NCBI GenBank assembly: GCA_028534125.1 | Contig: CM052843.1 | Location: 16,306,001-16,370,000 of the forward strand | Direction: 5' to 3' | Origin: Lama glama | Taxonomy: Eukaryota | DNA: 64,000 nt | Shown: positions 5,008 to 57,300 of the stretch, piece by piece | Layout of the letters: each line of letters opens with the position of its first letter | Numbering within the stretch: the stretch's first letter is position 1 | Position numbers and translations under genes: made by a program | The notes under the pieces: generated by a model | The model's database searches: none | Told to the model about the DNA's origin: nothing | Seen by the model: the letters and a program-made list of their open reading frames with translations, nothing else

Positions 5008-5189
5008 TACAGACATACATTTTTTTCAATTTCTTTTCAATTACAGCTTATTATAAGAAATTGAATATAGTCCCCTGTGCTGTACAGTAGGTTCTCGCTG
5101 CTTATCCACCTCACATGTAGTAATGTGTATCTGTCAATCCCAATTTCCCAAGCTATCTCCGCCCCCCGTAACCATAGTTTGTTTTCTAT
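4911..5189 (-). mobile_element. Lineage L1 3'UTR fragment, antisense, containing a compound (TA)n(CA)n microsatellite (~4938-5010)
   Basis: Matches the other L1 3' ends in the window (e.g. 55420-55965); poly(A) end missing. Confidence 0.85.
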
Positions 5190-18966: not shown

Positions 18967-20219
18967 ATTCTAGGGGACGATATTTCCTCCGTCCAAAATG
19001 CCGACTCACCTGTGCTGGAATGTAAAGCACCAAACCCAACGGTGATATGGGACGCGGAGCAGAATTTTTCATGCACAGTCCTTCAAATCTCACTACCTCT
19101 CAGTGTGGATACTTGAACTAGAAGGAGTCGGAGATGCAGGTGCTGGGGAGGGCTGCCACAGTCTTAGGCTACTTCAATAAACTTTCTCACAGAGTGGAAT
19201 TGAAAGGCGGAGCCGATCGCCAAGTGTACCACACACTGACTTCTAAGCGAACTTATACACTGAAATATTTCCAGTATGGTGTTCACCCAGAGACGCCAAA
19301 ATGCTGACACACACACACTACAAAGCTACGCATCATCCCCAAACCAATGCGAAACGCTGAGCCTGTCTGCCAAGGACACTAATTCTCAAAGAGATTAGCT
19401 TCCTAGCTCTATTAAAACACGGATAATTATAGCATCATGTTCATTACGCTGCAGCCAGCAAAGCACACATTCATCTTAATGCAGCTTCTCCCCCTTGGGG
19501 CTTCAGCACAAATATAGATGTTATCCTTTGGACCAGATCGTGAAGGCACGGAGCCTCAGTCTAGGGGATTAAGCAGGGGATGCTCGGCAGAACCAGACTG
19601 CAGCCTTGGCACGGGTGAGTGGCTCTGTCTCTCTGCCAGTGCCACGAGGCTGGCCTTCACCTTCAGCGAACAGTCCTGATCAATGTGATGACAAGGTACG
19701 TGCTAGGTGATCATCTCATTTCTCGTGGATGTCACCAACAGAGAAGAGTTTAATAGAGCCCCTGGCCGAACTGAGCTGTGCTCGTCAAAGAAAGCATCAG
19801 ACCAGGAGCTCTAACCGAAGCACAGATGCCAAAGACAGTCAAAGAGCGTGTCCATGGGGGCTCCCAAGTAAATTCTAAATGACAATGTGTTTCCCCAGAA
19901 GCGCTGTACTGTATTAAGTCCCTGCTTCATACTGTCATCCAAGGGAACTGGCAGTCGTGAGAACACCTGGCAGGAAGCGCAGCGCAGGGGACTGATCCAG
20001 ATTCCCAGCGGGGAGCGGGATTCTGTGCAGCTGAGAGCCGCGCTCACACCAGGGGGGCAGGCAGTGCAGATGCCCAGCAGCTCAGTCTGGCTGCTTCCCT
20101 TGCATCTGTCTGTTCCTCCCCAGTCAGACCAGGCACCATCTGAGCAGGGTGTTGGGAGGAAAAAATCCACCAGCCAGCTCTTTACTTCAGACCATCTCTA
20201 TGTCAATGCATCTTAAACT

Positions 20220-20565
20220 TAAACAATTATGTTCTCCGTGTCAAACGGGTCTGGTAAAACCCACTCACTCACACCGTCTCCGGACTTTTCTCTTCTACAA
20301 GGTCTATTTGAGGGTCTTCGTCATCACTACTGTTGGCAGTTGACTCTTCATTTGATATACAGTCAGCTTCTTCCTCAAGTACCTGCAGGTCTCCTGCATC
20401 AATAATCCCTAGAGATCCATTCTCATCTACATCTCTTGTACTTCTTATTTCATCATCGGAAGCTTTATCTCCAGTTTCATCTATTTGAATTATCTCATTC
20501 ACATCATCATCAGTTATCTGAATGCTTGAATCCATTTGAGAATTAGCATCTGTATAGCACAGGGA
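20220..20565 (-). pseudogene. GTF2A1L: Processed (retroposed) pseudogene fragment of GTF2A1L/ALF (TFIIA alpha/beta-like factor), acidic C-terminal region
   Basis: Minus-strand 20550-20290 translates DANSQMDSSIQITDDDVNEIIQIDETGDKASDDEIRSTRDVDENGSLGIIDAGDLQVLEEEADCISNEESTANSSDDEDPQIDLVEE. This is colinear with human ALF as I recall it (DSNSQVDLSIRVTDDDIGEIIQVDGSGDTSSNEEIGSTRDADENEFLGNIDGGDLKVPEEEADSISNEDSATNSSDNEDPQVNIVEE). After a frameshift, 20287-20222 reads KSGDGVSEWVLPDPFDTENIIV, matching ALF NSGDDVSEQDVPDLFDTDNVIV. No intron lies between the two parts. Flanked by ATCTTAAACT direct repeats (20210-20219, 20566-20575). Confidence 0.9.
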
Positions 20566-20596
20566 ATCTTAAACTACATGGTGGGTCCTCGTATTT

Positions 20597-20880
20597 CTTC
20601 ATTCCTTTACTCAGAAAAAAATTATAAGCGCTCTACTCTGCAGTGACAGTGGGCTGGGGACACGGGAGATCACGATCCCCGTCCTTGAAGAGCCCAGTAT
20701 AGTTGGGAGAACTGACTCAAGATTAGAGCCGTACACAGAGACTGCTGCCACAGTGGTTAGAAATATATATAAAATAAATGACCCAGTGGGCCAGGAATTC
20801 AAGGAGGGAGCAACTAAGATTGTCTAAATATGGAAGGAAATAACTTATGAAACAAACGAAATTCATATGCTGCTTTAAGG
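20597..20880 (-). mobile_element. L2 fragment
   Basis: Antisense L2 3' end (cattcctttactcag…ctggggacac…gtccttgaagagc). Confidence 0.5.
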
Positions 20881-36570: not shown

Positions 36571-37919
36571 AACACCTAACTCTTCACCATTTTGTGTCCA
36601 TTCTCCCCTTTATTCATTTTGATTCCTCTCCCAAGAGACCCTTTACCAAAATCTTCACGCATCCCAAATCAACCCAAATTCCAAGGCCCTTTTAAGTGTC
36701 ACTTTCCATCACGTGGTTTTTCTCTCCGCTTCCCAGTCCTAAGGAACTACTCCCTCTTCCCACCCCCATCCATCTATTTCCCTTTCCGTAAATCTCTCTG
36801 ACCATGTAAAGTATAGGTGTCCTCACGCTTGCCTGTGCCCCTTGCTGGACCTTAATTCGCTCCAGGGAAAGATTCGTCCAAATTATCTTAATTTCCTGGC
36901 ACCTGATGCAGCGTTTTGTCCATGGGAGCTCCTTAACCAACTGAGTGACTTAATGAAAGGACTAAATGTTTCAACATGTATGAAGCTAGCAATAGAGATA
37001 TTGGAGAGTGATGATAAGAAAGAAAATTTTTAGTAAAATAGTCAAGGTCAGAGGAAAGAGCTCACAGCAATTTCAGGCGCAGCTTCACGGAGAATGGCAC
37101 ATTGCTGGAATCATGGACCCGTATCTCACGGCAGCGTGGTGGTGACCGTGCACTCTGGCACTTGGCTGCTTATGGTGCTTCAAGGTAAGACTGCAACAGC
37201 CCCTGCATTTCATTAATAGCCCAGAGATCAACCCAAGGCTGTTTTTGTTAACCCGGGGGCAGGCAGCACTGGCAACAAAGGAAGTGAGCATATGGAGCAC
37301 ATTCGTAAGTGAAAGCAACAGACAAAGGGTGTAAAGAACAAGAGCCACAAGTCTCCCCGGCTGGGACCCTGCACCTGGGCAGATGGCCCGGTGGGTGGTC
37401 AAGGCGGTTCTGAGACAGCAGACCAGGATGGGCGGGACCAACGAGAAAGTGAGGTGAAGGATAAGAAGACATGTGTCTCTAAATGCTTTTCTCAGCCTTT
37501 GACAAAGCTTTTCTAGATGAAACCCCGCTGCACTCCCCTCCCCTGCTCCCTGTGACCAGGGCTCTGTAGTTTACGCTGGTCTGGCACTCATTTCACTGCA
37601 GGTCCTTCAGCTGTCCGTCCCTTGCGCTGGGTATTTTTGCTCTCCCCATAAGACGATAAGCTGGACCCCACAAAGAAAGCCAGCGCCTCCCTAAAGATAG
37701 TACCGAGCGGCGCCTATTCGGAGGGGACCATGCATGACTGATGAGTACGGAAAGAAGCGACAAATTCCAAAAAGACTTTTCTTTAAAAACCTCTGCTGTG
37801 TAACACAGGGAACCATATTCCATATCTTGTAATAACCTACAATGGAAAAGAATCTGAAAAAGAATAGATCTGTATACCTGTATATAACTGAATCTCTTTG
37901 CTGTGCACCAGAAACCAAC

Positions 37920-38419: not shown

Positions 38420-38488
38420 GAGGGGACCATGCATGACTGATGAGTACGGAAAGAAGCGACAAATTCCAAAAAGACTTTTCTTTAAAAA

Positions 38489-38672
38489 CCTCTGCTGTGT
38501 AACACAGGGAACCATATTCCATATCTTGTAATAACCTACAATGGAAAAGAATCTGAAAAAGAATAGATCTGTATACCTGTATATAACTGAATCTCTTTGC
38601 TGTGCACCAGAAACCAACACAACATTGCAAATCAACTATACTTCAATAAAAATAAAATTAAATTAAAAAAAG
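38489..38672 (+). mobile_element. Lineage L1 3' end (also present, duplicated, at ~37790-37919)
   Basis: acacagggaaccatattc…cttgtaataacctacaatggaaaagaatctgaaaaa…aatcaactatacttcaataaaa. Confidence 0.85.
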
Positions 38673-55419: not shown

Positions 55420-55890
55420 TTTTTTCTTTTTTAAAAAATTTTTTACTGAAGTGGAGTTGATTTACAATGTTTGTTTCAGGTGTACAGCAAAGTGATTCAG
55501 TTATACATTTACATACATATATGTATTTTTTTCAGATTCTTTTCCATTATATGTTATTACAAGAAGTCGAATATAGTTCCCTGTGCTGTACAGTAGGTCC
55601 TGTTGATCTATTTTACATATAGTGATGTGTATCTGTTGATCCCTAACCCCTAATTTATCCCTCCCCACCCTTTCCCCTTTGGTAACTATAGTTTGTTTTC
55701 TATGTCTGTGAGTTTGTTTTTGGTTTGTAAATAGAATCTGTACCATTTTTTTAGATTCCATATATAAGTGATATATGATATATGTCTTTCTCTATCTGAC
55801 TTACATCACTCAATATGATAATCTCTAAGTCCATTCATGTTGCTACAAATGGCAATATTTCATTCTTTTTTATGGCCGAGTAGTATTCCA

Positions 55891-55944
<54 letters not shown>

Positions 55945-55965
55945 CACATCTTCTCTGTCCAGTCA
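55420..55965 (-). mobile_element. Lineage L1 3' end, antisense, with (CA)n at ~55893-55941
   Basis: T-tract, then gttgatttacaatg…tcaggtgtacagcaaagtgattcagttata…ccattcatgttgct.caaatggcaa.atttcattctttttatggc.gagtagtattcca. Confidence 0.9.
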
Positions 55966-55989
55966 TATGGACATCAACCTCACATTTAG

Positions 55990-57300
55990 GTTGTGAGGTT
56001 CCCTTTCTTCTAAACTCCAATGTCTACCTCCCCTTCCTGGAACTCTCTTCTCTCATAGCATCACTTTATCCATCTCAGCTGAGTCTCCACTTCTCCAACT
56101 TTCTCAGTCTCCTTTGCTGGCTCATTTTATTTTGCCTCTTAAATGATGGTGTCCCTATGTCCTCAGCATTTTTTCTTTCTGCTTTGCTTGTCCTGTGTGA
56201 TTTAATTCTGTCTCCTAGCTTTAACCACATACCAACAATTTCCCAAATTTCCTTTTGTCTCCATTCCTGATCTCACTCTTAAGCTGACACTTTCATCTGC
56301 ACTGCACATTTTCAGCTAAAAAGCCTACAACTCTTTCCTAATTAACATTGACTTATTGTCATCATTCAGCCCTGCCCCCTACCCATATTTCATAAATCAG
56401 TTAATGCATTATCAATCGCCTGCTCACTCAAGCTAAAACACTTCCCTTCAGGCTTCATGTCTGATCTGTCATTAAATCTTGAAAGTCAACCTCCAGAATC
56501 ACTCTCTAATCCATCGACTCTTCTCTTTCCCCAGGGCCATTGCCTTGTTTAGATTTTAGTCTCTCCTCCCCAGATAAATGCTACAGACCCCTCAGTGATC
56601 TCTCCAGCTCTGCAGTCTTGTCCCTTCAGTCCATCCTCAGTCCTGCAGCTCCGTAGGACATAGTTATGTTCCTCCACGTCCACTCTGGGGATTCTCTGAT
56701 TAACATAGGATTTTATCACGCTCAGTGTTTACTTGTATCCCAAAGCCTATGATGATTTCTCTAGTTGGTGGACCTAGTATCTTGTATTCTATCAAGTCAT
56801 AAGAAGGCAATGCATTCAACTTGCAGCTTTGGCTATTTCTATGAAGTTCTAGACAAACTTTGGCAAAGCCATCCTACCCCCTTTCATTCTTTTTTTTTTA
56901 TTGCATCAATTATCAAATCAATGGACATTTAGCAAATGCTACCATGAAACTGCCTCTGTGCTAGTTAGTGGGAGTTTAGAGATGGGCTCTCGAACAGCTC
57001 AGAGTTCGAGTCGGGGTGGCAGAAATAAATGGACAGTTAATACATCATGGGTTATAAGTCCAACGACAGAGTCCTGCACAGGAATTCTTGTGTCTATAAG
57101 GGATGAACACATCACCCAACTTGGGGTCTCCTTAGAGAAAGTGCCACCTGAGAAGAGTCTTAATGGATGAGTAAGAGGTGGCTAGCAAAAGGGCGGAGGG
57201 AAAGTGAGGTGCAGGGAGGTCAGCAGTCGTACGTCTGTGCAAGGACTTCCAAGACCTTAGGTGCTGCTGGAGCATCACGTGTGAGAAGAGGGTGGAAAGA
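55990..57300. mobile_element. Degenerate L2 fragments (sense ~55990-56750, antisense ~56890-57300)
   Basis: Pyrimidine-rich L2 body followed by purine-rich antisense L2; approximate. Confidence 0.5.

What the first reader, a model, noticed from the sequence alone, without database searches (positions are those of the whole stretch)
20545..20566. Retrocopy appears to preserve an L1-exonised GTF2A1L splice isoform
Seen: on the minus strand the insert begins TTCCCTGTGCTATACA|GATGCT…. Those 16 nt match the antisense L1 3'UTR copies in this window (55577-55592 ttccctgtgctgtaca, 15/16; also 5071-5086). In both L1 copies the next bases are GTAGGT, a 5' splice-donor-like hexamer. The L1 match ends at the CA|GT donor position (the single G is shared), and ALF homology starts at GAT (Asp), which I recall as the first codon of a phase-0 exon (exon 7). 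Inference: the template RNA was a transcript in which a cryptic exon from an antisense L1, probably in the preceding GTF2A1L intron, was spliced onto exon 7. That would be a genomic fossil of an undescribed camelid testis isoform. It also implies this L1 family carries a usable antisense splice donor.
Basis: partly seen in the sequence, partly recalled or inferred. Interest (0 to 1): 0.8.

Follow-up and report, generated by a model that had tools for sequence, protein, structure and literature searches.

The report
ALF retrocopy with L1-derived leader
A dead, fragmentary copy of the testis transcription-factor gene GTF2A1L (ALF) starts with 15 bases of backwards L1 repeat joined exactly at an exon boundary, so it most likely records an ancient mis-spliced transcript; this is a fossil, not a working element.

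Summary
On the minus strand a 346-nt insert (20220-20565) lies between perfect 10-bp target-site duplications. It has three parts: 15 nt TCCCTGTGCTATACA; 261 nt equal to camel ALF aa 327-413; and, after a 7-nt deletion, aa 418-438. It has no intron and no poly(A) tail.

- **ALF side.** Homology starts at the first base of a phase-0 exon. Read-through gene predictions from several species switch from intron-like to ALF sequence exactly there.
- **L1 side.** The 15-mer is the antisense of the L1 3' region. In intact copies GTAGGT follows it. A strong acceptor and a 57-nt segment (stop-free and in frame in the one copy translated) precede it.
- **Rivals from ALF itself.** The native exon-6 end can match at most 9/15, and the exon-8 end (back-splice) at most 10/15.
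- **Age.** The copy keeps ancestral residues at five sites where Camelus and Vicugna share changes. It is also present, 15-mer included, in contigs 2.9% diverged. It therefore predates crown camelids.

A cryptic antisense-L1 exon spliced onto this exon is the best reading (about 0.55). A template switch or twin priming on L1 RNA is the main rival.

The decisive tests could not be run. These are an L1 in the parent intron and junction reads. This is a new instance of known phenomena. The scan has also noted another ALF retrocopy elsewhere in this genome.

The parts
20566..20575 (-). 5' target-site duplication (AGTTTAAGAT on the minus strand).
   Evidence: Perfect 10-nt direct repeat with 20210-20219 (family D3).
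20551..20565 (-). 15-nt leader TCCCTGTGCTATACA, the antisense of the L1 3' region. It ends where L1 continues with GTAGGT.
   Evidence: The exact 22-mer, including GTAGGT, occurs in 23 metagenome contigs, always in the same repeat. That repeat is L1, shown by the ORF2p C-terminus on the opposite strand.
20290..20550 (-).
   Evidence: tblastn: camel ALF P0055 aa 327-413, 76% identity; pig 80%. Exon limits from read-through predictions.
20285..20289 (-). Remnant of the exon 7/8 junction. 5 nt stand where DPLN (12 nt) should be, a net 7-nt deletion and a frameshift. No intron is present.
20220..20284 (-). Copy of the first part of the next exon (SGDGVSEWVLPDPFDTENIIV = camel aa 418-438). It stops 5 codons before that exon's end and has no poly(A).
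   Evidence: tblastn second HSP in another frame. Sequence.
20210..20219 (-). 3' target-site duplication.
55526..55598 (+). Reference antisense-L1 copy in the same window. It shows the acceptor tttttttcag (55526-55535), a 57-nt stop-free segment (55536-55592) ending in the motif, and the donor gtaggt (55593-55598).
   Evidence: The L1 lies on the minus strand: poly-T at about 55420 and the ORF2 C-terminal peptides EYYSAIKKNEILPF and MDLEIIILSDVSQIEKD at 55751-56020.
5071..5092 (+). Second antisense-L1 copy with the motif followed by GTAGGT.

Best explanation
The insert is a tailless processed pseudogene fragment of GTF2A1L, truncated at both ends and made by L1 machinery on the camelid stem lineage. 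Its RNA template was most likely a minor ALF transcript. In that transcript a cryptic exon from an antisense L1 3' end, sitting in an upstream intron, was spliced through the L1's ACA|GTAGGT donor onto the normal acceptor of the acidic-region exon. Reverse transcription started internally in the next exon, crossed the exon 7/8 junction and exon 7, entered the L1-derived exon and stopped after 15 nt. The cDNA was then joined to the target.

Shown: the anatomy, the exon boundary, the L1 identity and orientation of the 15-mer, the splice signals in L1, and the age bracket. Inferred: that the L1/ALF join was made by splicing, and that the L1 sat in the parent gene.
For: - **Anatomy.** TSD-bounded insert. 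It crosses the exon 7/8 junction without an intron, and no other ALF exon lies in the window.
- **ALF breakpoint.** It falls exactly on the exon start. P0006/P0004 read ...CLQ|N and ...FLQ|N, whereas the spliced mouse-like protein P0007 reads ...SEK|N. N cannot be encoded across an AG, so the boundary is phase 0. P0002 reads ...FSFQ|D.
- **L1 breakpoint.** It falls exactly before GTAGGT.
- **The 15-mer is L1.** It matches 15/15 to the variant found in 23 independent contigs. In L007 the ORF2p C-terminus (PDB 9k6g residues 1105-1269, E 4e-43 and 2e-23) lies on the opposite strand. The chance of an exact 15-mer hit anywhere in a 6.5-kb element is about 1e-5.
- **Null for the GT.** In 596 Gb of bacterial DNA the 16-mer gave 90 chance hits. 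None was in L1 context, and GT followed in 5 of 90.
- **Exon-like L1 segment.** Antisense L1 offers a poly-T/CAG acceptor 57 nt upstream. The 57-nt segment is a multiple of three and stop-free in the ALF frame. Such a cassette would not trigger nonsense-mediated decay.
- **Precedent.** Antisense L1 splice sites that cause exonization are documented in mouse (PMC2176070).
- **Rough odds (my inference).** A random breakpoint would hit the exon start (+/-1) about 0.2-1% of the time and a GT about 6-12% of the time.
Against: - Only 15 nt carry the whole L1 claim.
- The parent intron could not be read and no junction read was obtained.
- The donor is weak to moderate: -1 is A and +4 is G (my own knowledge of 5' splice-site preferences, not computed).
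- The single shared G at the join is also what microhomology-mediated joining would leave.
- The insertion is atypical. It has no poly(A), and the target CATGT/AGTTT is far from TT/AAAA. Unusual end-joining chemistry is therefore already in play.
- The coincidences were noticed after the fact.
- In other species' L1 copies the 57-nt segment often carries an in-frame TAG.
Confidence: 0.55

Rival explanations
1. The join was made during insertion, not by splicing. Either the reverse transcriptase switched from ALF mRNA to an RNA carrying antisense L1. Or, as a twin-priming variant, the top-strand nick primed on the L1 RNA of the same particle, made 15-16 nt of antisense-L1 DNA, and the two cDNAs were joined through the shared G. 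The match to both splice sites is then coincidence.
For: Chimeric L1-mediated insertions and 5' filler are well documented (Law and Burns preprint 10.1101/2025.02.02.635956; PMC2104539). L1 sense RNA is the RNA closest to the enzyme, and twin priming on it gives exactly the observed polarity. The junction has 1-nt microhomology. The insertion is already non-canonical: tailless, with a poor endonuclease site. L1 is so abundant that an L1-derived filler is not in itself surprising.
Against: It needs two independent coincidences. The ALF breakpoint must fall on the first base of an exon (about 0.2-1%). The L1 breakpoint must fall directly before a GT that is part of GTAGGT (5 of 90 in the empirical null). 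No RNA species is known to begin at an exon's first base. Classic chimeras carry the 3' terminus or full length of the second RNA, not an internal 15-mer.
Confidence: 0.27
2. An upstream exon was indeed spliced onto this exon, but it is not L1-derived. It could be an unannotated alternative or first exon that resembles the L1 motif by chance.
For: The exon-boundary coincidence alone points to splicing. Only 15 nt are available to identify the partner.
Against: The match to L1 is 15/15. The chance of that is about 1e-5 for L1 and, by my rough estimate, below 0.01 across all repeat families. The match also ends at the L1's own GT.
Confidence: 0.06
3. The 15 nt are the 3' end of the parent's preceding intron. 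The template was a partly spliced pre-mRNA or a lariat intermediate on which the enzyme stopped at the branch point. TTCCCTGTGCTATACAG then acts as polypyrimidine tract plus AG, and one G has been lost.
For: The 16-17 nt are pyrimidine-rich and end in CAG if the shared G is counted. 15-20 nt is a plausible distance from branch point to acceptor.
Against: It needs a 1-nt deletion exactly at the junction. It also needs an L1 fragment to form the acceptor of an exon conserved from amphibians to mammals. Read-through predictions in other species show ordinary ...FSFQ...FFLQ and ...FCLQ intron ends. The next intron was removed cleanly.
Confidence: 0.05
4. The 15 nt are ALF's own sequence. They could be a decayed end of the native upstream exon, another part of the CDS joined by deletion, or the end of the next exon joined by back-splicing (a circRNA-derived pseudogene).
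For: A tailless fragment of just two exons fits a circular template. The native ...LPVSEK could contain CCTGTG.
Against: These are upper bounds over all synonymous codons. Native in-frame PVSEK gives 9/15, the exon-8 end CQYDK gives 10/15, and the best place anywhere in camel, vicugna or pig ALF gives 13/15. The adjacent 21 nt of the copy encode DANSQMD against native DSNSQMD, a single changed residue, so local decay is low. UTRs could not be tested.
Confidence: 0.04

Closest known systems
Exonization of intronic antisense L1 through conserved antisense splice sites (Zemojtel et al. 2007, PMC2176070)
   Same: L1 in antisense orientation supplies GT/AG sites, and part of it enters a host-gene transcript. 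Intronic L1s are biased towards the antisense orientation, which raises the opportunity.
   Different: The documented mouse sites lie mainly in the antisense 5' UTR and ORF1. Here the sites are in the antisense 3' region of a laurasiatherian-type L1. The evidence is a DNA fossil, not cDNA.
Processed pseudogenes as fossils of past transcript isoforms (concept reviewed in PMC5470649 and PMC4772013; the original 'genomic fossils' study is recalled from my own knowledge)
   Same: A retrocopy preserves an exon-exon junction that is absent from the annotated mRNA.
   Different: Only 15 nt of the variant exon survive. The copy is tailless and truncated at both ends.
Tailless retropseudogenes (Schmitz et al. 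2004; Noll et al. 2015, PMC5322556)
   Same: 3'-truncated, no oligo(A), flanked by an 8-35-nt TSD. mRNA-derived forms truncated at both ends are reported. The start of the target (AGTTTA) resembles the element's 3' end (TTGTTTA).
   Different: The target CATGT/AGTTTAAGAT does not fit the reported TT/WAAAAWW consensus.
Chimeric L1-mediated retrocopies, such as U6/L1 and mRNA/L1 (PMC2104539, PMC4476161, preprint 10.1101/2025.02.02.635956)
   Same: Two unrelated RNA-derived pieces lie inside one pair of TSDs.
   Different: The L1 piece is antisense, internal and only 15 nt long. The join coincides with a splice donor on one side and an exon start on the other.

Membership tests
Processed (retro)pseudogene of GTF2A1L | Homology to the parent coding sequence | tested here: met
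   tblastn 76-80% identity over 87 aa plus 21 aa; E 1e-33 to 1e-38. Representative search: 21 hits (best E 4e-28); the full-length ones I read are TFIIA-alpha/beta-like factor proteins.
Processed (retro)pseudogene of GTF2A1L | Intron absent at a parental exon-exon junction | tested here: met
   VEE|DPLNSGDD is an exon junction, shown by read-through predictions VEE|VR..., and P0009 retains the intron there. In the window only 5 nt separate the two parts.
Processed (retro)pseudogene of GTF2A1L | Target-site duplication | tested here: met
   Perfect 10-nt repeat at 20210-20219 and 20566-20575.
Processed (retro)pseudogene of GTF2A1L | 3' poly(A) tail | tested here: not met
   The insert ends ...ATAATTGTTTA directly at the TSD. 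It therefore belongs to the tailless subclass.
Tailless retropseudogene (Noll et al. 2015) | 3'-truncated, no oligo(A), TSD of 8-35 nt | tested here: met
   Criteria from PMC5322556.
Tailless retropseudogene (Noll et al. 2015) | Target site TT/WAAAAWW and complementarity to the RNA's retained 3' end | tested here: inconclusive
   The target is CATGT/AGTTTAAGAT. There is a T/A at the break but no A-run. GTTTA is shared between the element's end and the TSD's start.
Antisense-L1 exonization | The transcript-derived sequence contains L1 in antisense orientation | tested here: met
   The 15-mer matches the antisense L1 3' region 15/15 and lies in the sense orientation of ALF.
Antisense-L1 exonization | The junction uses a GT donor in L1 and the host exon's acceptor | tested here: met
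   L1 continues GTAGGT at the breakpoint. The ALF part starts at the exon's first base. This shows compatibility with splicing, not splicing itself.
Antisense-L1 exonization | The L1 lies in an intron of the parent gene upstream of the acceptor exon | not testable with these tools
No collection available here holds camelid genomes.
Antisense-L1 exonization | RNA evidence (cDNA or RNA-seq junction reads) | tested here: inconclusive
   Read laying on 4 runs laid only the retrocopy locus itself and a third diverged ALF-like piece. No parent mRNA contig was laid, and a filter may remove conserved-gene contigs.
Template-switch chimeric retrogene | Two RNA-derived parts within one TSD pair | tested here: met
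Template-switch chimeric retrogene | Junction position unrelated to splice signals; the 5' part is the 3' end or full length of the second RNA | tested here: not met
   The junction sits on an exon start and on an L1 GT. The L1 piece is internal, about 150 nt from the L1 3' end.
circRNA-derived pseudogene | Back-splice junction: the end of a downstream exon joined to the start of an upstream exon | tested here: not met
   The exon-8 end CQYDK can match the 15-mer at most 10/15.

The most novel reading that the evidence does not exclude
The antisense 3' end of the laurasiatherian L1 lineage carries a ready-made 57-nt cassette exon: a poly-T/CAG acceptor, a segment whose length is a multiple of three, and a GTAGGT donor. 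This cassette is recurrently exonized in host genes, and this retrocopy is a fossil more than 17 million years old of one such event in stem-camelid germ cells. The 15-nt stop could mark an exon-junction complex blocking the reverse transcriptase; that last point is pure speculation.
Probability: 0.25. Interest if true: 0.45.

Novelty: new member of a known kind. Interest (0 to 1): 0.3.

Why it matters
If the splice reading is right, a 346-nt piece of junk DNA preserves a germ-line transcript isoform from tens of millions of years ago. It would also point to a specific, testable pair of splice sites in the antisense 3' end of a very abundant L1 lineage. Such sites could matter for cryptic-exon annotation and for disease-causing mis-splicing in camelids, livestock and carnivores. 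If the reading is wrong, the locus is one more chimeric, tailless L1-mediated insertion. Either way nothing suggests a present-day function: the ALF frame is broken and no promoter or expression evidence was found.

Tried and rejected
- **Reads.** Reads were laid at 80% likeness to catch parent-gene or mRNA contigs. Only the locus itself (run X10), its orthologue in a relative (X1, X3, X8) and a third diverged ALF-like piece were laid. No joints were found.
- **Identifying the fragments.** Pfam on the ALF fragment and on L1 3' ORFs gave nothing. The ESM Atlas gave nothing. PDB searches with the ALF fragment and the window's short L1 peptides gave nothing or only low-complexity hits. A longer ORF2 remnant from metagenome locus L007 solved this.
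- **Literature.** A search for the motif string found no paper.
- **Unbiased L1 copies.** A scan of genome contigs for the 16-mer gave 90 chance bacterial hits and no L1 copy. It served only as a null.
- **Twin-priming inversion of ALF itself.** A + strand frame at 20591-20770 resembles ALF aa 217-275 at only 25-28%. It was rejected as chance, because the direct part is 76% identical and the TSD lies between the two.
- **ALF's own sequence.** Native exon-6, other-CDS and back-splice origins of the 15-mer were rejected by codon-degenerate upper bounds.
- **Target DNA.** The flank beyond the TSD has no L1 similarity, so the 15-mer is not part of a pre-existing L1 at the target.
- **Not done.** The joined model (L1 segment plus ALF exon) was not sent to any search tool; pieces were searched separately by reference. 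P0005 looks primate-like, and only its amino-acid read-through pattern was used.

Full report
**What is there**

On the minus strand the sequence reads ...CATGT AGTTTAAGAT | TCCCTGTGCTATACA | GATGCTAATTCTCAAATGGAT.... A perfect 10-nt direct repeat bounds a 346-nt insert. On the plus strand it is ATCTTAAACT, at 20210-20219 and 20566-20575.

tblastn with camel, vicugna, pig, hippo and sperm-whale ALF places two blocks:
- 20550-20290 matches camel ALF (P0055) aa 327-413 at 76% identity (80% to pig).
- 20284-20222 matches aa 418-438 in another frame.

Five nucleotides stand where the four codons DPLN should be. No other ALF exon lies in the 64 kb. There is no poly(A): the insert ends ...ATAATTGTTTA directly at the repeat. 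The object is therefore an intronless, tailless fragment of GTF2A1L truncated at both ends. This agrees with the companion note s1-859766.

**The exon boundary**

The representative search nevertheless returned many single-exon gene predictions that read through the introns on either side of this exon.

- Downstream end. P0002, P0003, P0004, P0005, P0006, P0011, P0014, P0016 and P0021 all continue ...VEE|V(R/T/I/K).., which is GTN, a donor. P0009 retains the whole intron between ...IEE and DPLNSGDD.
- Upstream end. P0006 reads ...CLFCLQ|NCTSERD, whereas the spliced protein P0007 reads ...HVSEK|NCTSERD. P0004 reads ...FFLQ|NSTFERD and P0002 reads ...FSFQ|DYNSE.

Q is the intron's CAG. An Asn codon cannot start with the G or AG of an intron end. 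The exon therefore begins with the first base of the D/N codon, in phase 0. The ALF homology in the window begins at exactly that base (G 20550). The exon number was not checked.

**The 15-mer is antisense L1**

At up to 2 mismatches the 16-mer has four other hits in the window, against 0.06 expected. Both complete copies continue GTAGGT.

The copy at 55.42-56.02 kb starts with poly-T on the plus strand. On the minus strand it encodes EYYSAIKKNEILPF and MDLEIIILSDVSQIEKD.

A metagenome scan with the 22-mer TTCCCTGTGCTATACAGTAGGT found 23 contigs, all within the same repeat. In one of them (L007) the opposite strand encodes residues 1105-1269 of L1 ORF2p (PDB 9k6g and 8uw3; E 4e-43 and 2e-23). 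These end about 100-180 nt before the motif.

The retrocopy's version (..CTATACA) matches those 23 copies 15/15. It matches the two in-window copies (..CTGTACA) at 14/15 and 13/15. An exact 15-mer hit anywhere in a 6.5-kb element has a chance of about 1e-5.

As an empirical null, the 16-mer occurs 90 times in 596 Gb of bacterial genomes. None of these is in L1 context, and GT follows in 5 of 90.

**Could the 15 nt be ALF's own sequence?**

The exon-6 end is ...SSLPVSEK in nearly all mammals aligned. I took the best synonymous codon at every position to get upper bounds:
- the native in-frame sequence matches at most 9/15;
- the end of the next exon (CQYDK, the back-splice model) matches at most 10/15;
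- the best place anywhere in camel, vicugna or pig ALF matches at most 13/15.

The neighbouring 21 nt of the copy differ from the native peptide at one residue only, so heavy local decay is unlikely. The flank beyond the repeat has no L1 similarity, so the 15-mer is not target DNA from a resident L1. UTRs could not be tested.

**More support for a splice origin**

In antisense L1 the motif is preceded by tttttttcag (55526-55535). The 57 nt from there to the donor translate, in the frame set by ALF, to ILFHYMLLQEVEYSSLCCT without a stop. Where the upstream CAG or TAG is kept, I counted the 57-nt spacing in one metagenome copy (L005), and the others look collinear by eye; several of those copies carry an in-frame TAG.

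Antisense L1 thus offers a cassette exon with a strong acceptor. The donor ACA|GTAGGT I judge weak to moderate from general 5' splice-site preferences (my own knowledge, not computed).

Antisense L1 splice sites that drive exonization are established in mouse (PMC2176070).

**Weighing the mechanisms (inference)**

A join made during insertion would put the breakpoints anywhere. This covers a template switch, filler, or twin priming on the particle's own L1 RNA, which would give the observed polarity.

The ALF breakpoint falls on the first base of an exon. With a few exon starts in about 1.2 kb and +/-1 for the shared G, that is roughly 0.2-1%. The L1 breakpoint falls directly before a GT, about 6%. 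Splicing predicts both.

Against this, cryptic-exon isoforms are rare and the truncation must fall inside a 57-nt exon. My rough priors still leave the splice reading ahead by one to two orders of magnitude. I discount that for three reasons: the coincidences were noticed after the fact, only 15 nt carry the claim, and the insertion chemistry is already odd. It is tailless, and the target CATGT/AGTTT differs from the TT/WAAAAWW reported for this class (PMC5322556).

I put the splice fossil at about 0.55 and insertion-time chimerism at about 0.27. The remainder is shared among a non-L1 upstream exon, a retained intron end or lariat template, and ALF's own sequence.

**Age**

The copy has L in ..QIDLVEE, a residue seen only in artiodactyls in the alignment. 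It keeps the ancestral residue at five sites where Camelus and Vicugna share a change: T not A, D not G, N-E not S-G, and N not D.

Contigs from three runs of other studies (X1, X3, X8) cover the locus, including 20470-20700, with 36 differences in 1242 nt (2.9%). None of the differences falls in the 15-mer. A DNA run of the window's own organism (X10) differs at 2 of 601.

The insertion, 15-mer included, is therefore shared with a related species and predates crown camelids. It says nothing about a present-day isoform. The species names are coded, and 'camelid' rests on the scan's notes and on the best protein matches.

**Expression**

The RNA-library contigs run unspliced through the insert and its flanks. 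They cannot be told apart from DNA carry-over or intronic RNA. No parent mRNA or gene contig was laid. The tool warns that conserved-gene contigs may be filtered out, so this absence means nothing.

**Limits**

- The joined L1-plus-exon model was not searched; pieces were searched apart by reference.

**Verdict**

The kinds are known: antisense-L1 exonization, retrocopies as isoform fossils, and tailless retropseudogenes. The instance is new, and interest is modest.

Noticed in passing
window 37721-37919 and 38420-38618: Two 100% identical 199-nt direct copies lie 699 nt apart, and the second abuts an N run. This is probably an assembly duplication at a gap. Each holds a 5'-truncated L1 3' fragment whose antisense reading stops at ...GTTACACAG, the same L1 position (+/-1) as the L1/ALF junction at 20551.
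   Followed up: partly
window 20325-20413 (read-laying run X1, record 2): A 368-nt contig from an RNA library matches 89 nt of the ALF part at 89% and stays homologous, but below 80%, on both sides. It is a third, more diverged ALF-like sequence in that sample: another pseudogene or a relative.
   Followed up: no
another piece of the same genome (scan note s1-860451): The scan records a second GTF2A1L retrocopy in this genome, said to end inside an intron. ALF seems to have been retrocopied repeatedly in this lineage.
   Followed up: no
window 55860-55950: A (CA)n microsatellite interrupts the ORF2 C-terminal remnant of the L1 at 55.42-56.02 kb.
   Followed up: no
window 20591-20770 (+): A stop-free 60-codon frame just beyond the 5' TSD shows 25-28% similarity to ALF aa 217-275 (tblastn E 0.001 with hippo, 0.69 with camel). 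I judged it chance, not a twin-priming inversion.
   Followed up: yes
window 20285-20289: The only indel in the ALF copy, a net 7-nt loss, sits exactly on the exon 7/8 junction. This is probably coincidence, but use of an alternative acceptor in the template cannot be excluded.
   Followed up: no
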